From Thecamonas trahens ATCC 50062 (Eukaryota > Protista > Apusomonadida), in contig NW_013657649.1 of the NCBI RefSeq assembly GCF_000142905.1, positions 62,001 through 126,000 on the forward strand: a DNA stretch of 64,000 nucleotides, written 5' to 3'. How positions within the stretch are numbered: the stretch's first letter is position 1; each line of letters begins with the position of its first letter. The notes under the pieces were generated by a model. The model made no database searches and had not been told where the DNA came from. It worked only from the letters and a program-made list of their open reading frames with translations. This document shows, piece by piece, positions 1-21,425 of this stretch. Position numbers and translations under genes: made by a program.

Positions 1-2890
1 CCAGCCGCTGCTTGTCGAGCGGCGCCGAGCGGGCGAGGACGGTCATGGCCGGGAGGATGTGCTTGAGCTCGGCGTTGGTGCACTTGGCAAAGTCGGGGCC
101 CTCGAGCGCGGTGTCGAGGTCCGGGTCGTAGATGTTGCACTCGACGGCGATGGCGCGAGCGGTGTCAATGTTGTCGCCGGTGACCATGCGGACGACAATG
201 CCGGCCTTCTGGCAGTCGAGGACCGACTGCGGGACCTCGGGGCGGATGACGTCGTGGATGCCGGTGATGCCGATGACAACCGACTCGGAGATGTCCTCCT
301 CGTCCCAGTTGTCAGCCGGCGGCATGGCGAGATCCTTGTACGCAAGGCAGATGGTGCGGAGCGCGTGCTGCGCCATGTTGCCGATCTTAGCCTCGAGCTC
401 GCTGCGGATCTCGGGCGTGAGCCGGCGGACATTGCCCGACGCGTCGAGGTACGACACGCACTCAGCGAGGACCATCTCGGACGCGCCCTTGACGTAGTGG
501 CGGTACATGCCGTTCGAGAGACGGACAACGTACGACGAGCGCTTGCGCTTGGACGAGAACGGGAAGGCCTTGACCTTGGAGCCCGACGAGTCGGCCTCCT
601 CGCGCATGGCGCGGTAGTCCGGCAGCGAGCCGCGGACCTGCCGCGTGAACTTGAGCAGCGCCTGCTCGGTCGTCGAGCCGGTCCACTCGAGCTTGCTTCC
701 GCCGCCCTCCTTGGACTCGACGCTAACCTCGGCGGCCGACGAGTTGATGTTGATGCCCTGGAGGATCTTGAAGAGCAGAGTGCCCTCCACGCCCTCAGCC
801 TTGGGCCCGACCGACCAGTCCTTGACCTTCTTGGCCAGGAGCGCGTCGTCAGCAGAGTCGATGCCGGCCAGCGACTCGCCGGCAATCCAACCGTCGACCA
901 CCGTCATCTCGTTGCGGGTGAGCGTTCCGGTCTTGTCGGAGCAGATGACCGTGGCACGGCCCATGGTCTCGCATGCCGCAAGCTTACGGACCAGGTTCTG
1001 GTCCTTAAGCATCTTGACCATCGAGTAGGCCAACGCAATGGTGACGGCGAGCGGGAGACCCTCGGGCACCGCCACCACCACAATCGTGATCGACGTGATG
1101 ATGTACTCGGTCATGAGCTCGAGCGCCTCGTTGTCAATCTTCTTGCCCTTGTCAACCTGCATGATGAAGAACTTGACCGAGAGCACAATGAAGAGAATGA
1201 CGGCAGCAAACATGCCAAGCTTGCCAATGTCCTTGGCCAGCTTGTCGAGCTGCTTCTGCAGCGGCGTGTCCTCGGGCGGCACGCGGAGCGCCATGACGGC
1301 ACGTCCGTTGTGCGAGTCCATGCCGACGCACGTGACCAGCATCACCGCGTCGCCCTCCTTGATCTTCGAACCCGAGATGAAGAACGGGTTGTGCTTGTTC
1401 TTGTGGCAGAGATCCGGCTCGCCGGTCTGGCCAGACTCGTCCGCAGCACACGAGTTGCCGCTCACGTACAGCCCGTCAACAGGCACAATGTCGCCTGTGG
1501 AGAGCTGGAGCAGGTCACCCACCACAACGTCAAAGACCGAGATCGACTGCGCAGACTCGGAGCCCGACCGCAGGACCTTGACCGACTTGTCGTCCTTCTG
1601 CTTGTTGAGTTTCTGGAACTGCTGCTCCTTCTTGTAGTCGTTGAGCGCCGTGACCATGACCACCAGCGTGACGGCCACAAGAATGGCCGCACCCTCGATC
1701 CAACCGGCGGCACCGTCGTGCGACGCCACCGTCACGCCCAGAATGAGCGACACAATCGCCGCCACAATGAGCAGAATGAGGATAAAGTCCTGCAGCGTCT
1801 CATAGCAGAGCTCGAGGAACGACTTGGTTGGCGCCTCCGGCAGCCGGTTGGCTCCGAACCGCTCGCGCCGCGACGGAATGGTCGAGACGTCAATACCACG
1901 ATGCAGGTCCGTTCCGAGTGCGTTGGCCACACCCTAAGGAAAAAAAAAAAGAAACAAGCACCATTCGCAGCAGCAATCACAGTAGTCATAGTGGCCATAT
2001 CCATGGTGGTGGTAGGAGTTGCATGCGTGAGTAGGAGGAGCGAGCAGGGGGGGGGGGTGGCGCGGGATAGCCTGAGACCAAAAAAAAAATGGTCCCAACG
2101 GGCGCCATTCTGCAGCCCACAATCGATGGCTCTAAGTGTGACAAGAGGCCAGGTAGGGAGGGGGGGGGGGGAAGGGGGAGGCAGCTGCGCTGCATGGAAG
2201 AAGGATTAGATGGTGGGGTAGTAGGATATGTGTGGGTGGGGACAATGGTAAAGTGGGGAGGGGGGGGGGAGGGGGCTGGAGGAGGAGGTAGAAGCCACGG
2301 GCAGCGTGGGTGTAGGGGACGCCCAGCCCCGTTCCCCTTCTCCGTACTGCAATGCAAGCAAGCAAGGGCGGCAGGTCACACGAAAGCACCAAAAACTGAA
2401 AACTGAAATCATTCGGCCAACGATAAAATGATGGAGAAAGAATTGGTTGGTCGGTGGTTGGTAGCAGCGGCAGTGGGAGGCGGCCGCGGGGGGGGAAGGG
2501 GGAGGGGGACGTACGAGGAGCTTGCCCATCTTGCGGTAGAGCTTGGGGTTTTGCGGGTAGAGCTCGTACAGCTCGTCACGGTTGTACTCGAGACGCTCTG
2601 TGGGCTCGCCGCCCATGCCAGAGGACGAGGAATCGTCATTGGCAGCAGCCTTGACCTGGACGAGGCGGGCCCTGATCGAGTTGGACCGCTTTTCGCCAGC
2701 GGGTAACGCCCGAGACAGCAACGTCGGCAGGCGCAGCCGTGTTGGACTTGGTCTTGCTGCCGCCACGAGCCGCACGTGGCTGACTACGAGCTCCGCCGTC
2801 CTGGAGAGTACCTCCTTCCTCGTCCGAATAGAACGAATCGTAGTACGAGTACGACCCCGACCCGTCATCAAGAGGCGAACGTGCCGCCAT
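1..2890 (-). CDS. PMCA: Plasma-membrane/vacuolar-type Ca2+-ATPase (P2B, PMCA/PMC1-like), 3'-partial; exon 1 2890-2515, exon 2 from 1933 to the window edge
   Basis: Manual minus-strand translation gives PEGLPLAVTIALAYS, ACETMG, ICSDKTGTLT (phospho-Asp), KGASE, RMVTGDN and VLARSAPLDK. Exon 1 (...ELYPQNPKLYRKMGKLL) joins GVANALGTDLHRGID in phase 0. An apparent indel at the G3 run 2701-2703 breaks exon 1. Confidence 0.92.
1934..2514 (-). other. Spliceosomal intron in PMCA (581 nt)
   Basis: GTACGT donor at 2514; polypyrimidine TTTTTTTCCTTAG acceptor ending at 1934; splicing restores the frame. Confidence 0.85.
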
Positions 2891-3006
2891 GATGAGCTTC
2901 CGAGTGCAGTGTGCTCACGACTCGTCGACTTTGCCTTTGCCCTATTTTGCCGTTTGGCGGAACGCTGACAACTGGGCGTGGAGTGGTGTGGGTAGTCAGC
3001 GGGCTT

Positions 3007-3102
3007 GGTGCGTGGATGGGCTGGTGCGTGGATGGGCTAGTGCGTGGATGGGCTGGTGCGTGGATGGGCTGGTGCGTGGATGGGCTGGTGCGTGGATGGG
3101 CT
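3007..3102. repeat. Tandem minisatellite, 6 x 16 bp (GGTGCGTGGATGGGCT)
   Basis: Six adjacent copies with one substitution, just upstream of the PMCA ATG. Confidence 0.95.
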
Positions 3103-3145
3103 GGTTGGTGCAGGGTTAGGATGGCGCTGATCGGACCGGTGCAGG

Positions 3146-3229
3146 GATGAGCCTGGCAGTCATCGGCGTGGTGCAGTGATGAGTCTGGCAGTCATCGGCA
3201 TGGTGCAGTCATCGGCGTTGTGCAGTGAT
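3146..3229. repeat. Imperfect tandem repeat, about 32-bp unit (GATGAGCCTGGCAGTCATCGGCGTGGTGCAGT), 2 copies plus a partial
   Basis: Direct inspection. Confidence 0.8.
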
Positions 3230-4143
3230 CTGCCTGGCTATATAATCCCTGGCTGTTATCGGCGTAGACGGCGACGATGCGGGTGAGAATGAGCAGGAGG
3301 AAGAGCAAGGGGAAGGGCGGCATGGATACAAGGAAGACACCACTCGTCGTCAAAGCCACTGGGGCGTGTAGCACGAGCAGAGCAGGGACAATGCTTGCCA
3401 GGATTGTGCATGAGCATGAGGTGAAGAAGCGGGAGCAGGCGCGGACCAAGGGTAAGGGCTCAGGGGGTTGGGGGGAAGGGAGGGGGGGGGGGGGGGGGGG
3501 GGGGTACGGGGGGGAACGGTACGTACGGGGTACGGTACTAACGTTGGACTTGATCTAGGTGATNNNNNNNNNNNNNNNNNNNNNNNNNNNNNNNNNNNNN
3601 NNNNNNNNNNNNNNNNNNNNNNNNNNNNNNNNNNNNNNNNNNNNNNNNNNNNNNNNNNNNNNNNNNNNNNNNNACGGGCGGATCAGGGTCATAGGCATGT
3701 GGCCGTAGTGGCTGGAGTGGTCAGAGTGCCTGGACAGAGTGGACGGGGTGGGACGGGGTGAGACGGAGCGTGCTGGTCATTGTGTTCGGCTTGGTCGTGG
3801 TGTCTGTGCTCTCGGCAGCTGGGTCGCGTGACTGGCGGCGTGGCTGGCACAACTGGCGTGCGTGACTGGCGTGACTGGCGTGACTACGAGCATGACGGGC
3901 ATGGACCACTAGCATGACGGGCATGGACCATTGTGGACATCATACACATCATGGACATTGTGGCTGTACTTGTTGAGACTCATTCTGGACATGCTGGGCA
4001 TGTTCGACCATCGTCGTCGTTGTCATCATCATCGTCATCGCATCTGCTTACGAGCACATCGGCCCGCGACACCATCACAGCAACGAGAAAGGGCGACACA
4101 ACTCACTCACACGGAAACGAGGCGCATCGCAGCACATTTGCAG

Positions 4144-4440
4144 CGAACGGCAGTGGCGGCGGTTCAGGAGGTGTCGGACGTGCTGCTGGACAAGGTCAAC
4201 TCGGGCGTGGCGCAGGTCTTTGCCAACCAGCGTCTCATCGAGGGCGAGGCCAAGACCCTACATTCCCAGACCTCGCGCCTTGTCAAGCAGACCGGCCAGT
4301 GGGTGACTGCCGTCGAAAAGTTCAATTCGGCCCTCAAGGAGCTCGGTGACGTCGAGGCCTGGGCGAGGGCCATCGAAAGCGATCTCCGTCACGTCGCCGC
4401 CTCTCTCGAGTATGTCAACGACGCCACAACGTCGTCGTAG
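4144..4440 (+). CDS. BLOC1S1: BLOC-1 subunit 1 (BLOS1/GCN5L1); probably the last exon, 5' end uncertain
   Basis: VNSGVAQVFANQRLIE...QW...FNSALKELGDVEAWARAIESDL...LEYV matches the BLOS1 consensus. TTGCAG at 4138-4143 is a plausible acceptor; the ORF is open from 3931. Confidence 0.88.
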   Translation, partial: RTAVAAVQEVSDVLLDKVNSGVAQVFANQRLIEGEAKTLHSQTSRLVKQTGQWVTAVEKFNSALKELGDVEAWARAIESDLRHVAASLEYVNDATTSS

Positions 4441-4477
4441 TACACCATACGCTCCAGATCTAAACTCAATCTGCCGT

Positions 4478-6247
4478 CTAGCAAGTCGACGCCGCTGATG
4501 ACGCCGATGACTCCGACGGCTCCCTTCGCCGATACGCAACGTACTCGGTCCGGTACGCCGACAGGTCAAAGTCACTGCTGCAGGTCTGCGTCGCCGACGC
4601 ATCGGTCGACACCCCGCTAGTGCTGCCCGAGCTGGAGCTCGATTCGAGGCTGGAAGCCACACTGCAAGAGGCGTCAAAGACAGGCCCGGGCAGCGGAAGC
4701 GTCTCGAGCGTCACCGTCGTCTTCAGCTGTGACGATGAGTCGGACAACGACGAGAATGCGCGCTCCGAGGCACTCGATCGCGATTGCCGCGACCTCCGCC
4801 TCCGTCGTCGCTTGCGAGGGCGGCTCCCGTAGCAGCAGAGCCATCCTCCGCCACTACCGTCTGCAGTAGTCGAAAAGTCGTGCGACGACGGCCGGTGCGC
4901 GTCCGATCGTGGCAGGACATCCGGCGTCGGAAAGTTGGCGTATAGCGCGGCGTAGTCCCATTCATGTGGCCGCCAATATAGATCCAGGCCAGCGCTACAG
5001 TCTTTGGGCAGGCTGGCTGGCATTGGGCTGCACGACTTCGATGACGAGTCCGACGACGACGTCGATGACGATCCGACAGCCGGCGAGCACCCTGTTGGCG
5101 GCCACGTCGTTACCGCAGATCGGCCGGCGACAATGCTGGGACCCATCCATGGCCCCGGCTGTGCAACAGTCTCCGCGGAGCTCCGCCAGAATCGGCACCA
5201 GCCGGGGCACGCCGGGCTCCGCGCAGCCTCGATCCGATGAGCAGACGCCGACAGCGCAAACGAGGCCACCAGTCCAAAGTGGTCCGACGGAAACAGCCGA
5301 CGCATCTTGTCAGACCGCCCGCCGCGCTCGGGCGTCGCCAGCGGGCGGGTTCCGATTCGAGCCATGTACTCCGGCCGCCATCGCGGCCGCTGAGGGTGAG
5401 CCACCATCTCGTCGAGAACAGGCATTGAAGGCGGCGCCGACGACGACGAGGCGGATGACAAGTCCGAGTCGGGCGTGAGCGATCGAGTTCGCGATGCAGA
5501 TGCCGAGATGAGACTAACCGGCGGGCCGGAGAGCCGTCGGGCGAGACCGACGTGACCCGGCTCAAAGAACAGACAGCGATCGTAGCGGACGTGAAAGGCC
5601 TTGCGCTTGATCTTGCGCAACATCTCATTTGATGCCGTGTCCTGGGTCAAACCGGGATCGTCCGGGTACAGCATTGGCCACATGTCAATGAGGGGGGTGG
5701 CAACAAGCGCAAGCTCCTCCGGGGCATCGGTCGCCACGTTGGTGTCGCCGGCAATCACCACCAGCGCCGCTTGCTCCCAGTACGGCTCCAAATGACTGCG
5801 GATGTCGAGGATTTGGGCGACACGAAAGGCACCAAACTCGGGAAGCGACTCGAGATGAACGCAGCCGACAACGATGCTGTCCGCGGTGTTGACCTCGATC
5901 TCAGCGAGCAGCAGCTTGCGGTTCATCCGCGAGACAAGATCAAAGGCAATGAACCGTTTGACAGGTAACCGGGAGAGGATAACAACGCCGTACGGCTGCA
6001 GCGTCTTGCCGGAGCCGTCCGAGACAACAAAGTTGTTGCGGATCCATGCATGGGCGAGAATGTGGTTGAGGCTTCGCGGCATGACCTCCTGCAGGCAGAT
6101 GACGTGCGGATCGAGGGCGCGCAACTCGCACAGCGCGGCATGCAGCCGCTCGATCCAATACCCGTCTGCAAAGAACACGTTCCAAGACACTATCCGGAGG
6201 CGATCCAACCTCACATTGGGCAGCTCAAGGGATCCATCATGCTCCAT
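4478..6247 (-). CDS. Endonuclease/exonuclease/phosphatase (EEP) protein, TDP2-like, with a long low-complexity C-tail
   Basis: SWNV, ICLQEV, HLES, GDTN, RYDR and PSDHFG catalytic motifs in the expected order. Confidence 0.85.
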   Translation of the reverse strand: MEHDGSLELPNVRLDRLRIVSWNVFFADGYWIERLHAALCELRALDPHVICLQEVMPRSLNHILAHAWIRNNFVVSDGSGKTLQPYGVVILSRLPVKRFIAFDLVSRMNRKLLLAEIEVNTADSIVVGCVHLESLPEFGAFRVAQILDIRSHLEPYWEQAALVVIAGDTNVATDAPEELALVATPLIDMWPMLYPDDPGLTQDTASNEMLRKIKRKAFHVRYDRCLFFEPGHVGLARRLSGPPVSLISASASRTRSLTPDSDLSSASSSSAPPSMPVLDEMVAHPQRPRWRPEYMARIGTRPLATPERGGRSDKMRRLFPSDHFGLVASFALSASAHRIEAARSPACPGWCRFWRSSAETVAQPGPWMGPSIVAGRSAVTTWPPTGCSPAVGSSSTSSSDSSSKSCSPMPASLPKDCSAGLDLYWRPHEWDYAALYANFPTPDVLPRSDAHRPSSHDFSTTADGSGGGWLCCYGSRPRKRRRRRRSRQSRSSASERAFSSLSDSSSQLKTTVTLETLPLPGPVFDASCSVASSLESSSSSGSTSGVSTDASATQTCSSDFDLSAYRTEYVAYRRREPSESSASSAASTC

Positions 6248-6832
6248 CGTCTGCCCCTCCCCATCCCCCGCACAAACAAGGCAACATGTCCAGTCGATCA
6301 GTCGAACGTGGAGACCGGGGGCATGCAACAGCATCGCATGCACCAACAGAGATCCCAGGCCATTGCAAGGTGTGGTAAGTACAAATCAAGCACGCGATAA
6401 GTCCATCACCCATATCACGTTGAGAGCACCGCCGCCATCACCAGTGACAGTCGTGTCCGGCCAGCACATGTTCCCCACCCCCCCCCCCACAGCAGCACCC
6501 CCCCGCACGCCACATCGGTCTCCCGCAATGGATGTGAGTGGCTATATCCAAGCCGAGCGAGTGCAACCGATTCCGCAACACCACACTCTACGACATCGCT
6601 AGCTTGTCAATGGCGTCCTACATACCGATGTGGAGGTTGGAAGCCATCTCCGCCGACTGGAGTCCCATCGCTGCGGCTGGAGATTGACTCGGCCGAGCGG
6701 ACGGCCATCGCCTCTTGCAGCGCGCAGCATGTCCACAGTCACACTACGCCTTCACCAACACCTTGCCACTCTACGACCTCCCGGGATACCTGCCCAAAAC
6801 CACCTGGAGTCGAGTACCTGATCCTCTAGGCC

Positions 6833-6865
<33 letters not shown>

Positions 6866-7763
6866 CGCGATCTGACTCGAGAAATGTGAGTCGACTGCAG
6901 AGCGTCGAGCTCGGGTGTGTCAGCCGCAGACGGGTCGAGAAGCACGATGAGGAGCACGTCTGGTAGGATGGGGGAGTAACCAACAGGTCCCCACATCCCC
7001 CTTCCGCACCACGTAATAGTCAATTTGGCATAGCGCCCCGCGACGGCCACAATGCTTCATGCANNNNNNNNNNNNNNNNNNNNNNNNNNNNNNNNNNNNN
7101 NNNNNNNNNNNNNNNNNNNNNNNNNNNNNNNNNNNNNNNNNNNNNNNNNNNNNNNNNNNNNNNTACGGCCCGTCCCCCCCCCCGCCCGCCGCCGCCCCGC
7201 CGCCCCCGCCCCGCCAAGCTGCTCAGACTCGGCTGACCCGCACCGGTCTTCCGCACCCATCACATCTTTACCGCCGAGGGACGGCAACTGCAGCCACGAT
7301 GCGAGCGATCTACACATGGTGACTTGCTTGTTGATCGGTGGGTATAGAGAGGCAGGGAGGAAGCTGCATCGCCTACCACACTGTGGCTACAATGCCAACG
7401 ATCTTCCTCTCGATTGGCGGGTGTATGAGATGTTTGCGGAGAGAATAGGAGGGAGAGAATGAGGACATCGCCATGCCTGCGACCATCGCCGAGATCAAAC
7501 CGAGATGGTGTCTCATGGGAGGGGGGCAGGGGGGGGCAGGGGGGGGCAGGAGGAGAGGCGGGGGGCGGGAGGCGGGGGGCGGGAGGCGGGCAGGAAGCCG
7601 ATCAGACGCAACCATACTCTGATCATCCCCCCATCACCCTCCCCTCCTCCTCCCCCTTCCCTCTCCCGTCGTCTTCCCTCACAATCAGACTTGACCGGAC
7701 TGAGTCATGTCGCCCCACCGCCACCGCCACCGCCACCGCCACCACCACCCAACTCACTCACCC

Positions 7764-13563: not shown

Positions 13564-14523
13564 ATGGGATCAACTGTGTACTTTGAGCCTATTCCGTGGG
13601 GGATGTGGAGCGAGGACCCCGCAGGATTTGCGGCTGCGCTCGGGGCCTCCTTCCGCGAGACCGGCTTCGCCGTGGTGGCATCCCACCCTGTGGCCAGCGA
13701 GGTCATTGATGGGGCGTACGCGGCGTCCAAGGCGTTCTTTGCGCTCGACAAGGAGGCCAAGGGCCGATACCACGACCCGGACGGGGCTGGGCAGCGGGGA
13801 TACACTCCGTTCGGCAAGGAGCACGCCAAGGACAAGTCGGCCCGCCTGCCTGATGCCAAGGAGTTCTTCCACGTCGGCCGCCGCCTGCCCGAGGAGGCCT
13901 GGACGGCAGTGATGAAGCCGACGCCGAGCGTGCGTGAGATCGAGACCTTTGACGACGACACATACGCACTTTACCATGCGCTGGACCAGTTTGGCCGCGA
14001 GCTCCTCCGCGCCATCGCCCTTCATCTCGAGGTGCCCGACGATCTGTTTGATGGCGCTGTTGCCGCAGGCAACTCGGTTCTCCGCCTGCTTCACTACCCG
14101 CCGCAGCCGAACGCGCCGCCGCCGGGCGCCATTCGTGCTGCCGCGCACGAAGACATCTCAGTCATCACCCTCCTGCTCGGCGCCGAGGAGGCTGGGCTCG
14201 AGGTCAAGCATCGCTCGGGCGAGTGGCTCTCGCTCAACCCGCCGCCTGGCTCGATTGTTATCAACTGCGGCGACTCGCTGCAGCGGCTGACAGGTGGTGC
14301 GCTGCCGTCGACCACCCATCGGGTCGTCAACCCGACTCCGGAGCGGGCACTCTTCCCGCGCTACTCATCGCCGTTCTTCCTCCACTTTGAGCCCGACTTT
14401 GTCATCGAGCCCATCCCTTCGGCCCTCCATCCGGAGCCGCCCATTACCGCCGATGACTTTCTGATGGAGCGACTGACTGCCATTGGCCTTGTCAAGGCCG
14501 CAGCCAAGAGTGTCAGCGCATGA
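13564..14523 (+). CDS. 2-oxoglutarate/Fe(II) dioxygenase, IPNS-like (DIOX_N + 2OG-FeII_Oxy), bacterial-type
   Basis: RGYTPFG, KEFFHVG, LRLLHYPP, AHED (HxD), STTHRVVNP (distal His), RYS (RxS); no intron. Confidence 0.92.
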   Translation: MGSTVYFEPIPWGMWSEDPAGFAAALGASFRETGFAVVASHPVASEVIDGAYAASKAFFALDKEAKGRYHDPDGAGQRGYTPFGKEHAKDKSARLPDAKEFFHVGRRLPEEAWTAVMKPTPSVREIETFDDDTYALYHALDQFGRELLRAIALHLEVPDDLFDGAVAAGNSVLRLLHYPPQPNAPPPGAIRAAAHEDISVITLLLGAEEAGLEVKHRSGEWLSLNPPPGSIVINCGDSLQRLTGGALPSTTHRVVNPTPERALFPRYSSPFFLHFEPDFVIEPIPSALHPEPPITADDFLMERLTAIGLVKAAAKSVSA

Positions 14524-14573: not shown

Positions 14574-16442
14574 TTACGACTTGGGTGCCTGCTTCCGCCG
14601 CACCGTCGAGACGATGGCGGCGAGGGCGAGGCCGAGGAGGACGACGAAAAAGACAAAGAGGATGGAGATCTGGGAAGCCACGGTCCCAAACCCATGCTCC
14701 TTGATCTGGTACGTGGCAAGCATGTCCTCGCCTGAGTTGATAGCGCACGAGCCGTCGGACAGCGCCTCTGATGGCGAGCAGCGGAAGGTCATGTCCTCGA
14801 CCTCGGCGAGGAGGAGTGCGCCAAAGCCGTAGCGGAGCGGCGAGATGAACCGGAGCCAACGAAGCCATGCCGGAATGTTCTTTGGCACAATTAGGAAGCC
14901 CGAGACCATCATCGCCGGCATGAGCAGGAGCGGCGCAATGGCGTTGGCAACCGCAGCCTCCGAGGTAAACGCTGAGACTGTCACGCCCATCACCGATCCA
15001 ACGACGGCCGTCACACCGTGGATGAGGACGAACAGCGCAGCGGTACCCCATTCAGCCTTGAGACCGGCAAGCGGGTAGAGTGGGAGCGCAAAGAGGAGCT
15101 GGTAGAGGAACTGGAACGGGATGTCGGCAAGTACCCGGCAGAACAGGTACGTTGCCGGCCCATAGATACCATCGGCTGTCTCGCGGAAGAGCGCAGAGCG
15201 CTCGGACATGAAAACAAAGACCGAGGCCTGAACAGAGATAAAGATCGCGTTCGTGACTGTGAGGAAGAGAAGGCCCGCCCGATCTAGCGCTCCGGCCTGG
15301 GATGCATCGAGATTGTAGAGGAGGCCGAGGAGAAGGCCAAAGAAGACTGACTGCGCGACGTTGGACTTGACGGCAGACTCGTTACGGAGCGAGATCTTGA
15401 CCGCACGCTTGGTCAACTCCCATGCTTGACGGGCCCACGATGCGCGATCTGCTGGCGCAATGACGGCGAGTGGCGCAGCCGGTGCTGAACTAGCCTCGCG
15501 CGAGGATGTGATGGCCGGCGTTGTGGTCGACGATGACGACGACGATGACGACGACGATGACAAGGCAGCCCGTGAGTCGGCAAAGGCAGCAAAGGCGGCG
15601 GCATTCTTGGGCGAGGCGTCGGCCATGAGCTCGATGACAAAGTCGGCTGGATTCTTGAGGCGCGGGCAGGTGTGGCCCATGTCGGCAAAGTATGTAAGCA
15701 TGTCGTGGGTAGGGCCCGAGTACACGATGAGGCCGGCCGCCATGAGGAGGACAGTGTCGAACAGATTGAAGACGTAGACCGAGGGCTGGTGGATGGTGGC
15801 AAAGACGATGATGCCGCGGGTCTCGACAACCCGGCGGAGGGCCTCAATCACAGTCCGGGCGGCGCGGGCATCGAGGCCGGTCGTCGGCTCGTCGACAAAC
15901 AGGACCGAGGGGTTGATGAGGAGTGAAGCCGCAATGTTGAGCCGTTTGCGTTGGGCAAAGGTGAGGCCGTTGGCGGTCACGCCGGGCACGCCAATCTGGA
16001 CTCCGCGCACTGCGGTTAGATCCATGAGCTCAAGCACGTCATCGATGCGAGCGCGGCGATCTTCATCGGAGAGCGAGGATGGCAGCTGAAGGCGGGCGCG
16101 GAACCAAAGAATGTCGTCGGACGTCATGGTGTCGATAAAGGTGGCGTCCTGGGTCACGTAAGCTGTCGACGCCATGAAGGCATCATGATCGTAGACCGCA
16201 CCGTCGAGGCGGACAGTGCCTGACGATGAGACGCCCGCGGCGCGCGAGGAGAGCACGTTCAGCAGGGTTGTTTTGCCGGCGCCCGACGCGCCCATTAGCA
16301 TGGTCAGCTCGCCGGCAGCTACCGTGCCCGAGACCGAGCGCAGGATGGTCTTGATGGACTTGGCTGAGTCCGAGACGGCGCCTGGTTCGGCGCCGGAGAC
16401 CTTGACCCAGGCCTTGATGTCATTGAAGGAGAGCAGCGACAT
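14574..16442 (-). CDS. ABCG half-transporter A (NBD-TMD): canonical Walker A/B and H-loop, degenerate signature
   Basis: GASGAGKTT; signature GLTFAQRKRLNIA; VLFVDEPTTGLDARAA; ATIHQPS; ABC2 membrane domain. Start taken as MSLLSF; the upstream ORF extension runs through promoter repeats. Confidence 0.93.
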   Translation of the reverse strand: MSLLSFNDIKAWVKVSGAEPGAVSDSAKSIKTILRSVSGTVAAGELTMLMGASGAGKTTLLNVLSSRAAGVSSSGTVRLDGAVYDHDAFMASTAYVTQDATFIDTMTSDDILWFRARLQLPSSLSDEDRRARIDDVLELMDLTAVRGVQIGVPGVTANGLTFAQRKRLNIAASLLINPSVLFVDEPTTGLDARAARTVIEALRRVVETRGIIVFATIHQPSVYVFNLFDTVLLMAAGLIVYSGPTHDMLTYFADMGHTCPRLKNPADFVIELMADASPKNAAAFAAFADSRAALSSSSSSSSSSSTTTPAITSSREASSAPAAPLAVIAPADRASWARQAWELTKRAVKISLRNESAVKSNVAQSVFFGLLLGLLYNLDASQAGALDRAGLLFLTVTNAIFISVQASVFVFMSERSALFRETADGIYGPATYLFCRVLADIPFQFLYQLLFALPLYPLAGLKAEWGTAALFVLIHGVTAVVGSVMGVTVSAFTSEAAVANAIAPLLLMPAMMVSGFLIVPKNIPAWLRWLRFISPLRYGFGALLLAEVEDMTFRCSPSEALSDGSCAINSGEDMLATYQIKEHGFGTVASQISILFVFFVVLLGLALAAIVSTVRRKQAPKS

Positions 16443-16919
16443 GGCGTTTGCGGAATGTGCGCGGTTGACGAGGCGGGCGAGGGAGTGTCCGGCCGGGCGA
16501 TGGCAGCTGTTTTTGGGGATGCGGCGGAGGCGGAGGCGGAGGCGGAAGCAGCAGGCGGAGGCGGAGGCGGAAGCAGCAGGCGGAGGCGGAGGCGGAAGCA
16601 GCAGGCGGAGGCGATCGGCGGAGGCAGGAGACGAGGCGGTTGCTCGCAGGAGAGGGAGAACAGGGAGAGAGGCGAGTCTAGGACGGCACGTGGTAGAGCG
16701 CGTAGTCTGTGGTGGTTGTGTCTTGGCGTAGTCTGTGGTGGTTGTGTCTTGGCGCAGGCGAGTGAGGGGCGGAAGGAGGAGGCGGAAGGAGAGGCGGAAG
16801 GAGGCGGAGGCGGAAGGCGGATGGCCAGCGAGCGGGAACAAAAGGCAGAGGTATTGCGGCGGCGGCGGGCGGTGGTGGCGAGGCAGACAGACTTGAATCA
16901 TCAGCGGTGCAAGGCGGTG
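16443..16919. promoter_or_regulatory. Putative bidirectional promoter of the ABCG pair (477 bp) with repeat arrays
   Basis: Lies between divergent ATGs. Contains 3 x 25-bp GGCGGAGGCGGAGGCGGAAGCAGCA (16529-16603), a perfect 2 x 26-bp GCGTAGTCTGTGGTGGTTGTGTCTTG (16700-16751), and further GGCGGA units at about 16768-16822. Confidence 0.65.
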
Positions 16920-19076
16920 ATGGAGTTTGAGATGGTGGCGAGCGTGACCAGCTCGACTAGCGCAGCCTGCTCGAGCTCGACCAGCTCGTCGACAAGCTCG
17001 GGCACCACAAGTACGACGACCGGGACCGGGACCGGGACCGGGACTGGGACTGGGACCGGCACCGGAACCGGATCGGGGATCGGGACTAGCACAGCAAGCT
17101 CCCTTGACTCCTCGGGCATGCTTGCATCAAGCACGTCGTCGCAGACGGCGGCTTGGCGCGACGTGATTGTATCTGAGCTGACGGTGGAGACCAAGACCGG
17201 CGAGGTGGTGGTGGACGGGGCGTCGATGTGGCTGCGGAGCGGGCGGCTGACGCTGCTGGTCGGTCCGGCTGGCTCGGGCAAGACGGTGCTGCTGGAGACG
17301 CTGGCGGGGCGGATGGGGCGTGGGCTGGGCATTGGCTCGGGCACAGTGTCGCTGGGCGACGAGACGGTGGCATCCGCGCAGTCGGGCATCCGCAAGGCGG
17401 TGCGCGACCGGATCGGGCTGGTGACGCAAGAGGACATTGTGCTGGAGAGTACGACGACCCGTGAGTCGCTGCAGTTTCTGGCGGCGGTGTACCACGGAAG
17501 CAGCAGCTCCGCGGAGCGGGAGAAGATCATCGACTCGGTCCTCGCCTCGCTAGGCATGACCAAGGTGGCGGACACGGTAGTCGGGACGCCGGGGCTCAAG
17601 CGCGGGCTCTCAGGTGGCGAGCGAAAGCGGGCTAACATTGCGCGGGCGCTGGTGAGCCAACCAGATGTGCTGCTGGTGGACAACCCGACGGCCGGCCTGG
17701 ACTCTGCCACTGCAGTGGTGGTGATCGAGGTGCTGGCGGCGCTAGCGCGATCGGCACAAATCCCTGTTGTGGTCGCACTTTCTCAGGGTGCGGTCGAGGT
17801 CTTTGATGCTTTTGATGATGTGGTTTGCCTCGCCAGCGGCGGGCGGGTTGCCTTTGCCGGCTCCGGCGCGGACCTGCTCCCGCACTGGGGCGCTGCAGCC
17901 GGCATGGAGTGCCCAGATGGGGTGAGCCCGATCGAGTTTGTGGTCGAGGTGCTGGCAGGCCCGGAAGCTGGTGAGAACGCTAGCGGATCCGGCAGCAGCT
18001 CCGGCAGTCGATCCGGTAGCGTGTCGTCCAGCTCAAGCTCCGGAGGCGGAGTCCGATACGCGTTGGCGGAGGAAGGTAAGGGCGGCAAGAGCATGTTGGA
18101 GCGCGCGCTGGCGGTCTCGCCGCAGGTAGCGCTGCCTACTATGAGTAAGAGCCTGAGCTCGCCGCGTAGGCATGGCGATGACGACAGCGATGGGAGCGGA
18201 AAGAACTGTGGCGGATGCAGCGACTCGCTGCGGCGGACCGGGCGCGGGTTCTGGCAGCTTATCAAGCGCAACACGGCGGTGATGAGGCGAAGCACCGAGG
18301 CGACAGGCGCGCGACTGGTGCAGGCGCTGGTATTCTCACTGCTCATGGGCGTGCTCTACTACCAGATTCCGCGCGGTCAGGACGCCGGCTACGACCGCGG
18401 CGGGCTCCTTCTGCTGGCGTCTGTCATGCCGATGTTCTCGGCGATGGAGGCGGCGGTGGCGGTGTTCATGGCCGAGTTTGCCACTTACCGGCGTGAAGTC
18501 AAGGAGGGCGTGTACGGGCCGGGCACGTACCTACTGGCCATGATTGTAGCGGATCTCCCGTGTCTTGCGGTGGTCATGATCCTTGCCATTGTGCCGGTCT
18601 ACACGCTCGCAGGCCTCACGGCGACCTTCAAGGCCATTGCGGTCTTTACGGTCGCGAACACGCTCCTTGCTTTGCTAGGCAGCTGGATGGGCGTCCTGCT
18701 TGCGGCGCTGTCGGGCGATGCCAACACGGCCAACATCCTTGCGTCTGCGGTTGTGCTGCCGGGCATGATGTTCACCGGCGTGATGCTCAAGTTTGACAAC
18801 ATGTGGACCGGCTTTGCGCTTCTGCGGCACCTCTCGTTCCTCCGCTACGGCTTTGCGTCAATGATGATTGCCGAGCTGGAGGACATGACGCTATCATGCA
18901 CAGACGACGAGGCCATCAACGGAACTTGCCCCATCGTCAGCGGGCAGGCCGTCCTCGACCAGCTGCAGGTTGAGCGCGACGGCGGACTCGCCTACTCGAT
19001 GGGCATGCTCACCCTCTGCGTGGCTGTCATCGGTCTCATGACTTGGGCCGCGCTCTGGCGCGCGGCGCGGCGATGA
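16920..19076 (+). CDS. ABCG half-transporter B (NBD-TMD): canonical signature, catalytically degenerate Walker B and H-loop
   Basis: GPAGSGKTV; GLSGGERKRANIA; VLLVDNPTAGLDSATA (E to N); VALSQG (H to S); ABC2 TMD; S/T/G-rich N-terminal extension. Confidence 0.93.
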   Translation: MEFEMVASVTSSTSAACSSSTSSSTSSGTTSTTTGTGTGTGTGTGTGTGTGSGIGTSTASSLDSSGMLASSTSSQTAAWRDVIVSELTVETKTGEVVVDGASMWLRSGRLTLLVGPAGSGKTVLLETLAGRMGRGLGIGSGTVSLGDETVASAQSGIRKAVRDRIGLVTQEDIVLESTTTRESLQFLAAVYHGSSSSAEREKIIDSVLASLGMTKVADTVVGTPGLKRGLSGGERKRANIARALVSQPDVLLVDNPTAGLDSATAVVVIEVLAALARSAQIPVVVALSQGAVEVFDAFDDVVCLASGGRVAFAGSGADLLPHWGAAAGMECPDGVSPIEFVVEVLAGPEAGENASGSGSSSGSRSGSVSSSSSSGGGVRYALAEEGKGGKSMLERALAVSPQVALPTMSKSLSSPRRHGDDDSDGSGKNCGGCSDSLRRTGRGFWQLIKRNTAVMRRSTEATGARLVQALVFSLLMGVLYYQIPRGQDAGYDRGGLLLLASVMPMFSAMEAAVAVFMAEFATYRREVKEGVYGPGTYLLAMIVADLPCLAVVMILAIVPVYTLAGLTATFKAIAVFTVANTLLALLGSWMGVLLAALSGDANTANILASAVVLPGMMFTGVMLKFDNMWTGFALLRHLSFLRYGFASMMIAELEDMTLSCTDDEAINGTCPIVSGQAVLDQLQVERDGGLAYSMGMLTLCVAVIGLMTWAALWRAARR

Positions 19077-19298
19077 CCGAGAATGCGAGTGTGCGACGCT
19101 GCAATGGGCCCAGCGAATGAGAAAGTAAAAGAAACTGATGTCCGTCTCTCTGTCATCGGGCGGCGGCGGAGCGAGCCCCAAGAGCGTTGTCGCCAAGGCG
19201 GCGGGGGCAGCAGCGTTTCACATCGGCCAATTCCAATGGGTTCGATCCGGGCTCCGGGTCGCCGTCTTGTCATCGACAACACCTGTCTCATGCTCAGC

Positions 19299-21425
19299 AT
19301 GGACGACCTCGAGCTCGACTGGGGCGTGGCGAATGTGAAGCTGCCGGGCGCAGCAGCGGTGGGCGCTGATGCTGCCGCTGGTGGCGAGGCCGTTGGCGGG
19401 GCGCGGGGCGGAAGCGGCATGGCGGGAGACGGACGAGGCGGGAGGCGGCGCGGTCGCCGCGACAAGGTGGCACGCGCATGCGACTTTTGCCGGCGGCGGC
19501 GGCGCAAGTGTGATGGCAATCAGCCTTGTGCGGCGTGTCGACGACGGGGGAGCGCGTGCACGTTTGCCATGCCTCGGGGGCGGGGGCAGCAAGGCGCGTC
19601 AAGCATGGCATCGAGCGGAGGTGCGACTCCGGCGACGTTGATGGGCGTGAGCAAGCCAGCGGTGAGGGGGGTGCAGTTGAGCGAGGTGAGGGAGCGAGGC
19701 GAGGACGATTGGCTGCTGTCACCGCTGGCGATGGTCCCGCTCTCGGCAGACGTGTCGCTCGACAATCAGCATCTTGAAGCCGCCCAGGCTCTGCGGCACC
19801 AGCTGGCGACACCAAGCCCAAGGGCGAGCGACCACGAGGCAGCAAGATCGCTGGACTCACTCTCGCTGCCGCTGCCACTGGCGCTGGATGGTCCAGTGCC
19901 GGTGGTGAAGCAGCCGGGCGATGAGCAGAGTCTTAAGCGGCGGCGGGCGGCGGCGGAGGGCGACGACGAGAACGAGGACGAGGCTGGGGCATGGGAGCTC
20001 GCCCGCGCACTGAAGAGGCGGGCACACTTGGGCTCGATGTCTGCAGTACGGCACTTGCTTTCGACGTTCGGACGGCTGGTGGCGCCGACGCTGGGCCTGG
20101 CGACTCCATACGGATGGGGCGGCCTCTTTCCGCGGGCAGCAGTGATGCAGCTCGACGCCATCTCAGCGGTGACGCTCCGCGGGATGGGCGAGACTGCTGC
20201 AGCGCACTCGGCCATTTCGTCGGCCAAGGCTCGACTGGCGCGAGTTTATGACGTGCCGTCGCTCGAGGTGGCGTACGGCCACTTTTTGGTCACCACCTAC
20301 TTTGTGGGCGTTAATCACGCCGAGGCGGCGCTGCACGCCGGATGCTGTATTGCGATTCTGCGCGCAATGGCTCGGACAGCAGGGGCCACCCTGCCAGCGC
20401 TACACTCGAAGCTCTCATTTGATACCGTTTCTACGCTTGTACGGGCGCTGATGGAGCTCTCCGAGGTGTACGCGACTCGGATGGTGGCAGCGAACTCAAT
20501 TAAGGCGCTGGCGCTGCGCCACGCGTCGAGCCCACCACTCTTTCTCTCATTTCCGGCCGAGGGCTCGTCGCGGGCAAAAGAATCGTGCGAGTCGGGAAGC
20601 CTGGCTGTGCCAGTCATGGTACCGGAGCGGTGCGCCGCGCTGCTGTCTGCGTTCCGGTCCGGCGATCGCGGCGCGGTGCGTGCGCTGCTCCCGCCATCAC
20701 TCACGGTTGCCGACCATTCGCCGATATCATACGAGCTTTTCATGGTCCTGTACCGGGCGCTTGGGCCAACGATGGAAGCAGTGCTCTCGGTGCCACCGCA
20801 TCCCAGCACTGACCCGGTGCCACGCGAGCTGCTGTCGCTCGCCGCCGCGCTGTACAATGCGGACCTGCCCGAGCCAAGCGGCGAGGTCTCGTACTGGAAT
20901 ACACTTGTCGGCCTCGATCTCATTGACGGGTGCTCCGGCCGAAGCTATCCAGATCGCGACGCTTCTTTGCTGGACGCACTGGGTACGCTTCCGCTGTTTA
21001 CCCAATTCATGGACTTGCTTGATGAGGACCTCGCTGCCGGCGTCCCTAGCCACGAGCTCTGCTGCGGCGAGCAAACGAGCTTGTTTCAAGCTTTTGTCAT
21101 TGTCTCACACGCCTATTTTATGGCGCTGTCAGACATGTGTGAGACTGCCAAGGTAGCAGCGTCGATGGAGCGCATGCTGACACTGCTCGAGAGCGTGAGA
21201 GACCAGCTTGCGGCCGGGTGGACGTTCTCGATCATGACCCTAGTCATGGCCGCCTGTGTCGCAGTCCTCGTCAAGTCGAGCCATGACTTTATCTCCCGCA
21301 TCCTTGCGCTCGGCGAGGCCATTCCCAGCGAGAACGCTCCGGTGTGGACCATGGTCGGGCGGATACTACGGACATCGACGAGCTCACTCCCCAGGCCTGC
21401 TGCGCCTTTTGGGGTGGGGGTGTAA
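19299..21425 (+). CDS. Zn(II)2Cys6 (GAL4-type) transcription factor
   Basis: ARACDFCRRRRRKCDGNQPCAACRRRGSAC binuclear cluster followed by a long helical region. Start uncertain; the ORF is open from 19083. Confidence 0.9.
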   Translation: MDDLELDWGVANVKLPGAAAVGADAAAGGEAVGGARGGSGMAGDGRGGRRRGRRDKVARACDFCRRRRRKCDGNQPCAACRRRGSACTFAMPRGRGQQGASSMASSGGATPATLMGVSKPAVRGVQLSEVRERGEDDWLLSPLAMVPLSADVSLDNQHLEAAQALRHQLATPSPRASDHEAARSLDSLSLPLPLALDGPVPVVKQPGDEQSLKRRRAAAEGDDENEDEAGAWELARALKRRAHLGSMSAVRHLLSTFGRLVAPTLGLATPYGWGGLFPRAAVMQLDAISAVTLRGMGETAAAHSAISSAKARLARVYDVPSLEVAYGHFLVTTYFVGVNHAEAALHAGCCIAILRAMARTAGATLPALHSKLSFDTVSTLVRALMELSEVYATRMVAANSIKALALRHASSPPLFLSFPAEGSSRAKESCESGSLAVPVMVPERCAALLSAFRSGDRGAVRALLPPSLTVADHSPISYELFMVLYRALGPTMEAVLSVPPHPSTDPVPRELLSLAAALYNADLPEPSGEVSYWNTLVGLDLIDGCSGRSYPDRDASLLDALGTLPLFTQFMDLLDEDLAAGVPSHELCCGEQTSLFQAFVIVSHAYFMALSDMCETAKVAASMERMLTLLESVRDQLAAGWTFSIMTLVMAACVAVLVKSSHDFISRILALGEAIPSENAPVWTMVGRILRTSTSSLPRPAAPFGVGV

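What the first reader, a model, noticed from the sequence alone, without database searches (positions are those of the whole stretch)
14574..19076. Split PDR-like pump: two head-to-head ABCG halves with reciprocally degenerate ATPase motifs
Seen: gene A (-) has intact Walker A (GASGAGKTT), Walker B Glu (VDEPTTGLDARAA) and H-loop (TIHQP) but a broken signature (GLTFAQRKR). Gene B (+) has a perfect signature (LSGGERKR) but catalytic E to N (VDNPTAGLDSATA) and H to S (ALSQ). Established: each ABC site combines Walker A/B and H-loop of one NBD with the signature of the other, so neither homodimer has a canonical site, while an A+B heterodimer has one active and one degenerate site. From memory, this is the pattern of full-size PDR pumps: yeast Pdr5 NBD1 has VSGGERKR, DNATRGLDSATA and no His; NBD2 has GASGAGKTT, LNVEQRKR and TIHQP; GLDARAA is typical of plant PDR NBD2. 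It also parallels head-to-head vertebrate ABCG5/ABCG8. Inference: an obligate heterodimer on a shared promoter, representing a pre-fusion state of PDRs, a PDR split by inversion, or convergence.
Basis: partly seen in the sequence, partly recalled or inferred. Interest (0 to 1): 0.85.

Follow-up and report, generated by a model that had tools for sequence, protein, structure and literature searches.

The report
Asymmetric ABCG half-transporter gene pair
Two back-to-back genes of the protist Thecamonas trahens encode half ABC pumps whose ATP-site defects complement each other, so they most likely work only as a pair with one live ATP site; this copies the design of fungal/plant PDR pumps and animal ABCG5/G8, but family trees show it arose on its own.

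Summary
Gene A (-, 14574-16442) keeps Walker A, the catalytic Glu and the H-loop His but has lost the SGG signature. Gene B (+, 16920-19076) keeps a perfect signature but has Asn for the catalytic Glu and Ser for the His.

The genome is Thecamonas trahens (an apusomonad). It holds two more such divergent pairs, on contigs C66 and C11, and three marine metagenome contigs carry the same pair. All 9 A-type and all 7 B-type proteins show the same reciprocal pattern. Their nearest canonical relatives do not.

cDNA contigs of a related strain cover each gene separately. Most differences from that strain are synonymous.

The PDR link is rejected. A and B are sister clades nested among White-type half-size ABCGs. 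Bona fide PDR first and second halves form their own clades elsewhere. Forcing A with PDR half 2 or B with PDR half 1 costs 159-268 log-likelihood units (AU p <= 4e-7).

Best reading: an obligate heterodimer with one catalytic and one degenerate ATP site. It arose by duplication of a half-transporter and was inherited as a two-gene unit. It is convergent with PDR pumps and probably with ABCG5/G8.

The scan had already noted a sister pair elsewhere in this genome (s1-744722). Heterodimerisation itself is inferred, not shown.

The parts
14574..16442 (-). Gene A: A-type ABCG half-transporter (622 aa, NBD then TMD). Catalytic residues intact, signature motif degenerate.
   Evidence: ORF. Start at M154, identical to public model P0121. 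Pfam ABC_tran + ABC2_membrane. PDB hits ABCG1/ABCG2/Pdr5 at E 1e-69 to 1e-80.
16920..19076 (+). Gene B: B-type ABCG half-transporter (718 aa, NBD then TMD). Signature intact, catalytic Glu and H-loop His replaced.
   Evidence: ORF. Pfam. PDB hits. The cDNA contig begins at 16889, so the first ATG is at 16920.
16443..16919 (.). Shared 477-bp divergent intergenic region (putative bidirectional promoter). Not covered by the cDNA contigs.
   Evidence: Sequence. In run X1 the contigs end at 16466 and start at 16889. No 9-mer is shared with the intergenic regions of the other pairs.
16266..16292 (-). A Walker A, GASGAGKTT (canonical; near-invariant in 9 A-type proteins).
15942..15968 (-). A signature position, GLTFAQRKR (SGG lost; hypervariable among A-type proteins: TFA, NFV, SLA, STT, NTA, NVA).
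15858..15896 (-). A Walker B with the catalytic Glu retained (VDEPT...).
15783..15797 (-). A H-loop, TIHQP (invariant in 9 A-type proteins).
14805..15428 (-). A transmembrane domain (ABC2_membrane match).
   Evidence: residues 492-699 of the 775-aa ORF
17262..17285 (+). B Walker A, GPAGSGKT (Lys kept; the rest is variable among B-type proteins).
17607..17630 (+). B signature, LSGGERKR (canonical; invariant SGGER in 7 B-type proteins).
17676..17714 (+). B Walker B with Asn in place of the catalytic Glu (VDNPT). Other B-type proteins have D, S or G here.
17775..17789 (+). B H-loop position, ALSQG (His replaced by Ser; Ser or Ala in all B-type proteins).
18249..18878 (+). B transmembrane domain (ABC2_membrane match).
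   Evidence: residues 599-808 of the 873-aa ORF

Best explanation
A and B are lineage-specific paralogues of a White-type (half-size) ABCG transporter.

Origin. A single half-transporter gene was duplicated into a divergent pair. The two copies then lost complementary ATP-site residues.

How it works (inferred from the established head-to-tail NBD dimer of ABC transporters):
- Only the A.B heterodimer builds one complete catalytic site: A's Walker A, Walker B Glu and H-loop His together with B's SGG signature.
- The heterodimer also builds one non-hydrolytic site that probably still binds ATP: B's Walker A Lys, no catalytic Glu or His, and A's degenerate signature.
- In an A.A dimer both sites would lack a signature. 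In a B.B dimer both sites would lack the catalytic base and the His.

Inheritance. The two genes are transcribed divergently from a roughly 0.4-0.5 kb shared region and are inherited and duplicated as a two-gene unit.

Relation to known pumps. The resemblance to PDR pumps (Asn for Glu, an LNV-like signature, 'GLDARAA') and to ABCG5/G8 (head-to-head genes, one dead site) is convergent. The substrate is unknown.

What is shown: the sequence pattern, its conservation, the phylogeny, transcription of both genes and purifying selection. What is inferred: physical heterodimerisation, single-site catalysis and co-regulation.
For: 1. Motifs verified in the window.

2. Same pattern elsewhere. Thecamonas has two more divergent pairs (C66, C11). 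Three marine metagenome contigs carry the same divergent pair (L043, L044, L046). The motif table covers 9 A-type and 7 B-type proteins:
- Residues of the predicted live site are near-invariant: A GASG[AG]GK[TS], A D-E, A TIHQP, B SGGER.
- Residues of the predicted dead site vary freely: A signature TFA/NFV/SLA/STT/NTA/NVA; B Glu position N/D/S/G; B His position S/A.
- The four nearest canonical relatives keep every motif.

3. Phylogeny.
- FastTree on 303 halves: A+B sister at 0.984, outside a 144-tip PDR-type clade (0.992).
- IQ-TREE LG+C20 PMSF, quick search: A 100, B 100, A+B 96, then the canonical halves C10a/P0246 (91) and P0205/P0236 (97). PDR_h1 96, PDR_h2 97.
- NBD-only and TMD-only trees agree.
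- With named plant, fungal and oomycete PDR halves and animal 'white' proteins added, the PDR halves join the PDR clades and A+B (0.995) sit with White-type halves.
- AU test rejects A+PDR_h2, B+PDR_h1, and both together (delta lnL 159-268, p <= 4e-7).

4. Partner trees are congruent: (C31, L044) and (C66, L043) are recovered in both the A tree and the B tree with 95-100% support.

5. The C66 and C11 pairs are a duplication of just the two-gene unit. A2/A3 are 98.4% and B2/B3 93.1% identical in DNA, and the flanks are unrelated.

6. Expression. Run X1 has one contig over A (14818-16466) and one over B (16889-19083). The contig over A ends at the gene's 5' end in a loose tail that I read, from my own knowledge, as a template-switch-oligo-like sequence, so the material is cDNA. 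Word depths are 48 and 53. Nothing covers 16467-16888.

7. Selection. Against that strain A has 7 synonymous and 5 non-synonymous differences, all 5 in the Ser-rich linker. B has 10 synonymous and 3 non-synonymous.
Against: - No direct evidence of a physical A.B complex or of ATPase asymmetry. AlphaFold-multimer was not available.
- Depths from contigs of one run cannot establish co-regulation (warning).
- In one environmental sample (SRR30952584) an A-type gene (P0279) and a B-type gene (P0180) lie on contigs where no head-to-head partner is visible. Adjacency is therefore not universal, or those contigs are too short.
- B3 on C11 carries a 1-nt gap in a G-run relative to B2, so one copy may be decaying.
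- Profile searches do score the B-type profile best on the first half of Pdr5/Cdr1 and the A-type profile best on the second half. I attribute it to convergent motif states, because the trees and the AU test reject common descent.
- The AU searches were stopped after 10-20 iterations and used LG+F+G4 without a mixture model.
- No ABCG5/G8 sequences were in the trees.
Confidence: 0.72

Rival explanations
1. The pair is a relic of PDR evolution. Either it is the unfused heterodimer from which full-size PDR pumps arose (B ancestral to NBD1-TMD1, A to NBD2-TMD2), or it is a full-size PDR gene split into two genes by an inversion.
For: - Motif resemblance: B has D-N like Pdr5 N334 and a canonical signature, as PDR NBD1 does. 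A has a degenerate signature, as PDR NBD2 does (Pdr5 facts from PMC8421411).
- The B-type profile aligns best to the first half of Pdr5/Cdr1 and the A-type profile to the second half. The Capsaspora PDR query shows the same preference in the genome.
- No full-size PDR was found in the Thecamonas genome.
Against: - A and B are sister clades nested among canonical half-size ABCGs in every tree: FastTree on 303 tips, PMSF IQ-TREE on 67 tips, NBD-only, TMD-only, and with named PDRs added.
- PDR first and second halves form their own clades, which group with each other.
- Constrained topologies are rejected (AU p 4e-7 or lower, delta lnL 159-268).
- A and B carry no PDR accessory domains.
- With B1 as a single-sequence query, Pdr5 NBD2 scores higher than NBD1.
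Confidence: 0.03
2. The pair is orthologous to animal ABCG5/ABCG8. On this view, a head-to-head asymmetric ABCG heterodimer already existed in the common ancestor of apusomonads and opisthokonts.
For: - The gene arrangement is the same. Head-to-head ABCG5/G8 is conserved from humans to arthropods (PMC7756502; PMC3724490).
- The logic is the same: one partner has a degenerate signature and the other a degenerate Walker side.
- Apusomonads are the sister group of opisthokonts (my own knowledge).
Against: - Different residues are degenerate. ABCG8 has lost the Walker A Lys. B-type proteins keep the Lys and have lost the Glu and His.
- There is no reciprocal affinity in profile scores against solved structures. 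The A profile scores G5 314 and G8 302. The B profile scores G5 318 and G8 311. The canonical sister C10a scores G5 211 and G8 201. All three score ABCG1/ABCG2 higher.
- The immediate outgroups of A+B are fully canonical halves, including one from the same genome.
- An earlier agent of this scan reached the same view on a sister pair (s1-744722). That is not independent evidence.
Confidence: 0.06
3. A and B do not form an obligate pair. A works as a homodimer or with another canonical half (for example C10a). B is a non-catalytic regulatory or decaying paralogue that merely sits next door.
For: - Heterodimerisation has not been shown.
- One B copy (B3) has a possible frameshift.
- In sample SRR30952584, adjacency of an A-type and a B-type gene is not seen.
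Against: - B's signature, the only part of B needed for A's catalytic site, is invariant in 7 B-type proteins, while B's own catalytic positions drift.
- B is transcribed and is under purifying selection (10 synonymous against 3 non-synonymous differences).
- The A and B trees are congruent and the pair is duplicated as a unit.
- An A homodimer would have no intact signature in either site.
Confidence: 0.12

Closest known systems
ABCG5/ABCG8 (animal sterol exporter)
   Same: - Two half-size ABCG genes lie head-to-head on a shared promoter and form an obligate heterodimer.
- One nucleotide-binding site is catalytically dead because one partner has a degenerate signature and the other a degenerate Walker side (PMC7756502; PMC3724490).
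   Different: - Different residues are lost. G8 has lost the Walker A Lys. B-type proteins have lost the catalytic Glu and the H-loop His.
- No specific sequence affinity to G5 or G8.
- The nearest relatives of A and B are canonical protist halves and 'white'-type proteins.
- Substrate unknown. Orthology was not tested by a tree.
PDR-type full-size ABCG pumps (Pdr5, Cdr1, plant PDR/ABCG29-43)
   Same: - The composite-site logic is the same. The first half supplies a good signature but has lost its catalytic residues (Pdr5 N334). The second half is catalytic but has a degenerate signature (LNVEQ) (PMC8421411).
- Some A-type signatures even read LNV or LNF.
   Different: - Here there are two separate genes rather than one (NBD-TMD)2 polypeptide.
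- No PDR accessory domains.
- Phylogenetically outside both PDR half clades, and the AU test rejects membership.
- Walker A Lys and Q-loop Gln are kept in B-type proteins (one exception: L046 has E at the Q-loop), whereas the fungal-type NBD1 halves in this data set have lost them.
White/ABCG1-type half-size ABCG transporters
   Same: - Same architecture (NBD-TMD, ABC2_membrane) and the same clade in the trees.
- The nearest relatives are canonical halves C10a (same genome), P0246, P0205 and P0236, followed by the animal 'white' group.
   Different: These relatives keep all ATP-site motifs and could act as homodimers. A and B have reciprocal losses.
Bacterial heterodimeric ABC exporters with a degenerate site (TM287/288, BmrCD, PatAB, EfrCD)
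   Same: Adjacent genes encode two half-transporters, and one consensus and one degenerate ATP site are formed in trans (reviewed in PMC7756269, listed; the details given here are my own knowledge).
   Different: They have a different fold class (type IV exporter, TMD-NBD order), are bacterial, and are organised as operons rather than divergent genes.

Membership tests
ABCG half-size (White-type) transporters | Reverse domain order: NBD first, then an ABC-2 type TMD, in a protein of about 600-700 aa. | tested here: met
   Pfam ABC_tran followed by ABC2_membrane in both A and B.
ABCG half-size (White-type) transporters | Closest solved structures are ABCG proteins. | tested here: met
   ABCG1, ABCG2, ABCG5/8, plant ABCG16/25 and Pdr5/Cdr1 at E 1e-38 to 1e-80.
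ABCG half-size (White-type) transporters | Phylogenetic placement among half-size ABCGs. | tested here: met
   A+B are sister to the canonical halves C10a/P0246, then P0205/P0236, then a clade with animal 'white' proteins.
PDR (full-size ABCG) pumps | A single polypeptide with two NBD-TMD halves. | tested here: not met
   Two separate genes on opposite strands, each with one NBD and one TMD. Separate cDNA contigs.
PDR (full-size ABCG) pumps | Descent from the PDR half-1 and half-2 lineages. | tested here: not met
   A and B lie outside both PDR half clades in all trees. Forced monophyly is rejected (AU p <= 4e-7).
PDR (full-size ABCG) pumps | PDR accessory domains (PDR_CDR, PDR_assoc, ABC_trans_N). 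| tested here: not met
   No such Pfam hit in A or B at E <= 0.01. None in the genome either, but those genome searches had no positive control.
PDR (full-size ABCG) pumps | One degenerate site built from first-half Walker motifs and the second-half signature. | tested here: met
   The B-type Walker side and the A-type signature are the degenerate elements. This is a resemblance in how it works, not membership.
ABCG5/ABCG8-type heterodimer | Head-to-head gene pair. | tested here: met
   Divergent arrangement in 3 genomic and 3 metagenomic loci.
ABCG5/ABCG8-type heterodimer | Orthology to ABCG5 and ABCG8. | tested here: inconclusive
   No reciprocal affinity in profile scores against G5/G8 structures, and ABCG1/ABCG2 score higher. 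No tree with G5/G8 could be built, because no sequence reference was available.
ABCG5/ABCG8-type heterodimer | Physical obligate heterodimer. | not testable with these tools
   Needs co-purification or a multimer model.
ABC heterodimers with a degenerate nucleotide-binding site | All degenerate residues map to one composite site and all consensus residues to the other. | tested here: met
   Motif table of 16 proteins.
ABC heterodimers with a degenerate nucleotide-binding site | The asymmetry is conserved among orthologues, and the partners co-evolve. | tested here: met
   (congruent A and B trees). (the pair duplicated as a unit).

The most novel reading that the evidence does not exclude
The head-to-head asymmetric pair might be homologous to animal ABCG5/ABCG8. 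The arrangement, and the one-live-site design, would then date back to the common ancestor of apusomonads and opisthokonts, with later drift in which residues are degenerate. My evidence (similarity ranks only, no tree with G5/G8) makes this unlikely but does not exclude it.
Probability: 0.06. Interest if true: 0.75.

Novelty: new member of a known kind. Interest (0 to 1): 0.42.

Why it matters
It appears to be a third, independent origin of the 'one live, one dead ATP site' design inside the ABCG family. Independence from PDR pumps is shown here. Independence from ABCG5/G8 is only probable.

Here the two halves are still separate genes. That gives a natural split system for asking why degenerate sites evolve and what they do. 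Each half can be expressed and mutated alone, which is impossible in fused PDR pumps.

It also shows that PDR-like motif states (Asn or Asp for the catalytic Glu, LNV-type signatures) are convergent end points. They are not reliable markers of PDR ancestry, which is a caution for motif-based classification of protist ABC transporters.

The public annotation names these genes 'Abcg4' and 'ABCG2', which hides the pairing. I found no paper on them: a full-text search for Thecamonas plus ABCG gave one unrelated hit.

Tried and rejected
1. PDR kinship, tested in several ways and rejected (see the rival explanations).

2. A careful IQ-TREE run (PMSF plus ultrafast bootstrap) and treekit's own AU test did not finish on the single CPU. 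I used the quick PMSF tree and a 40-row LG+F+G4 AU test on unfinished constrained searches.

3. The first protein search, with B's NBD region, returned mostly unrelated prokaryotic NBDs because of word-based candidate picking. Only P0001, P0002 and P0003 were useful.

4. Names for the PDR-type representatives were sparse. Pfam accessory domains were absent from the protist full-size proteins I sampled. I therefore anchored the PDR clades in two ways:
- a colinear match of the Capsaspora protein to Cdr1/Pdr5;
- named plant, fungal and oomycete PDR fragments.

5. Genome searches for PF06422 and PF08370 found nothing, but had no positive control.

6. I looked for sequence words shared by the intergenic regions of the pairs and found none of 9 nt or longer in three or more regions.

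7. The neighbours of the window pair (a 2OG-Fe(II) dioxygenase and a Zn2Cys6 factor) are not found beside the C66 and C11 pairs. So a conserved 'detox cluster' is not supported by the paralogous loci.

8. ABCG5/G8 sequences could not be fetched by reference, so that tree was left out.

9. An A-B multimer model was not possible: the tool folds a single chain, and I did not hand in a hand-made fusion construct.

Full report
**What is there**

The window is contig C31 (62001-126000) of a 28.7-Mb, 131-contig genome. One paralogue is the NCBI protein 'Abcg4 protein [Thecamonas trahens ATCC 50062]', carried on a contig of 571,036 bp, which is the length of contig C11. The organism is therefore the apusomonad Thecamonas trahens.

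Both proteins have ABC_tran followed by ABC2_membrane. Both hit solved ABCG structures at E 1e-38 to 1e-80.

The ORFs over-extend at their N-termini:
- Gene A most likely starts at 16442. This gives 622 aa, identical to the public model P0121.
- Gene B most likely starts at 16920, giving 718 aa.
- The divergent intergenic region is then 477 bp.

A and B are 35-36% identical in both the NBD and the TMD.

**The pattern is conserved, not a one-off**

The genome holds two more divergent pairs, on contigs C66 and C11.

The public protein searches found further A-type and B-type proteins. Three marine metagenome contigs carry the same head-to-head pair: L043, L044 and L046.

A motif table covers 9 A-type and 7 B-type proteins.
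- Every A-type protein keeps GASG[AG]GK[TS], the Walker B Asp-Glu and TIHQP. Each has lost the SGG of the signature (TFA, NFV, SLA, STT, NTA or NVA instead).
- Every B-type protein keeps GLSGGER[KR]R and the Walker A Lys. Each has N, D, S or G at the catalytic Glu position and S or A at the His position.
- So the residues of one composite site are near-invariant, and the residues of the other drift freely. That is the signature of a consensus site paired with a degenerate site.
- The four nearest canonical relatives keep all motifs.

**Both genes are live**

In run X1 (a related strain, about 99% identical), one contig covers 14818-16466 and another covers 16889-19083. Nothing covers 16467-16888.

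The contig over gene A ends at the gene's 5' end in a loose tail. I read that tail, from my own knowledge, as a template-switch-oligo-like sequence, so the material is cDNA. The 5' UTR of A would then be about 24 nt.

Word depths are similar (48 and 53), against 0-7.5 for the bins that flank the two genes. The tool warns that contig depth cannot rank genes, so I treat this only as evidence that both genes are transcribed.

Differences from that strain:
- A: 7 synonymous and 5 non-synonymous, all 5 in the Ser-rich linker.
- B: 10 synonymous and 3 non-synonymous.
- No difference is listed at the Asn or Ser codons, so these are not read errors.

**Evolutionary origin**

I cut 303 NBD+TMD halves from the 150 best hits among the database's cluster-representative proteins, the genome's own paralogues and the metagenome pairs. 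I scored the motif state of each half.

Results by method:
- FastTree (LG+G, 578 columns): the A clade and the B clade are sisters (0.984). Next to them are canonical halves. The clade of full-size first halves (58 tips; 57 have lost the H-loop His) and the clade of second halves (62 tips, all with a degenerate signature) sit together in a separate 144-tip clade (0.992).
- Quick IQ-TREE under LG+C20+F+G4 (PMSF), 67 halves: A 100, B 100, A+B 96, plus C10a/P0246 91, plus P0205/P0236 97. PDR_h1 96, PDR_h2 97.
- NBD-only and TMD-only trees both place A and B with C10a/P0246.

The clade label 'PDR' is justified in two ways. The Capsaspora member aligns colinearly with Cdr1/Pdr5 over both halves. 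Named plant, fungal and oomycete PDR halves fall into these two clades, while animal 'white' proteins fall near the A+B group.

Constrained trees were rejected by the AU test with p <= 4e-7:
- A with PDR half 2: 268 log-likelihood units worse.
- B with PDR half 1: 159 units worse.
- Both constraints together: 229 units worse.

Caveat: these searches were stopped at 10-20 iterations and used LG+F+G4. The best constrained scores seen in the logs are still 159 units or more below the free tree.

Profiles of the B-type and A-type proteins score best on the first and second halves of Pdr5/Cdr1 respectively (compare). Given the trees, I read this as convergence in the motif positions.

**The pair behaves as a unit**

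Separate trees of the A partners and the B partners of six loci are congruent at all supported nodes. (C31, L044) and (C66, L043) are recovered in both trees with 95-100% support. So at least two pair lineages already existed before Thecamonas split from the metagenomic organisms.

The C66 and C11 pairs are a recent duplication of just the two genes. A2/A3 are 98.4% and B2/B3 93.1% identical in DNA, and the flanks are unrelated.

The A-type family is small. There are eight clusters at 90% identity among 5.8 billion proteins, scoring 658-1035 bits, and then a gap to 484 bits. The only named organism is Thecamonas.

**Relation to ABCG5/G8**

The arrangement and the logic match ABCG5/G8 (PMC7756502; PMC3724490). 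Three things differ:
- The residues lost are different.
- The A-type profile, the B-type profile and the canonical C10a all rank the solved structures alike. ABCG1 and ABCG2 score above G5, and G5 scores above G8.
- The immediate outgroups of A+B are canonical halves.

I could not obtain G5/G8 sequences by reference, so no tree was made. Orthology is unlikely but not excluded.

An earlier agent of this scan read a sister pair of this genome in the same way (s1-744722). I do not count that as independent support.

**Mechanism**

This part is inferred from the established head-to-tail NBD dimer.
- A.B has one complete catalytic site: A's Walker A, Walker B and H-loop with B's signature.
- A.B also has one site that can probably bind ATP but not hydrolyse it: B's Walker side with A's degenerate signature.
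- A.A would lack signatures in both sites. B.B would lack the catalytic base and the His in both sites.
- Physical heterodimerisation, single-site catalysis, co-regulation and the substrate remain untested.

**Limits and counter-observations**

- In sample SRR30952584 an A-type and a B-type gene lie on contigs with no visible head-to-head partner.
- B3 has a 1-nt gap in a G-run relative to B2. The public model (P0391) does not encode the roughly 60 nt around it, as if they were an intron.
- No full-size PDR was found in the genome. The domain searches for PDR accessory domains had no positive control.

**Verdict**

The PDR-ancestry reading is rejected in favour of convergence. This is a new, small, lineage-restricted member of a known kind of system, and it is of moderate interest as a natural split model of ABCG catalytic asymmetry.

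Noticed in passing
G000 contig C66 (L031: B2 2473-4803 -, A2 5033-7030 +) and contig C11 (L032: B3 2403-4498 -, A3 4928-6907 +): Two further divergent A/B pairs in the same genome. They are a recent duplication of just the two-gene unit: A copies 98.4% and B copies 93.1% identical in DNA, flanks and intergenic regions not alignable.
   Followed up: yes
L032 about 3505-3515 (contig C11, gene B3): A 1-nt gap in a G-run relative to B2 shifts the frame inside the conserved 'GYECP' region. The public model (P0391, 655 aa) does not encode the roughly 60 nt around it, as if they were an intron. This is either an assembly error or a young pseudogene.
   Followed up: partly
window 13564-14520 (+) and 19083-21422 (+): The pair is flanked by a 2OG-Fe(II) dioxygenase (DIOX_N + 2OG-FeII_Oxy) and a Zn2Cys6 (Zn_clus) protein. 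The C66 and C11 pairs have unrelated neighbours (F-box-like, PALP enzyme, GT4 glycosyltransferase), so a conserved cluster is not supported.
   Followed up: partly
window 16512-16613 and 16690-16750: The intergenic region holds GGCGGA-type repeat arrays and a direct duplication of about 26 bp. CGG/CCG density is 7.8 per 100 nt against 5.7 for the window. No 9-mer is shared with the intergenic regions of the other pairs.
   Followed up: partly
window 17007-17085: A GT-rich microsatellite encodes the (Thr-Gly)n stretch in B's N-terminal extension. The related strain's cDNA contig is 6 nt longer here, an in-frame length polymorphism.
   Followed up: no
proteins P0124, P0126, P0154, P0158, P0174: In several full-size (two-half) ABCGs of other eukaryotes (for example Lagenidium and Gefionella), the two halves are each other's closest relatives. 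This suggests repeated, independent tandem duplication and fusion of ABCG halves outside the PDR lineage.
   Followed up: partly
G000 contig C10, L041 1289-4417 (+) and 4438-6810 (-): A tail-to-tail pair of ABCG-like genes with fully canonical ATP-site motifs in both. It is probably the pair noted by the scan as s1-753796.
   Followed up: no
G000 contig C10, L033 2434-5160 (-): C10a is the closest fully canonical relative of the A/B clade in the same genome. Its open reading frame runs about 340 aa upstream of the NBD. It is a useful comparator for experiments.
   Followed up: partly
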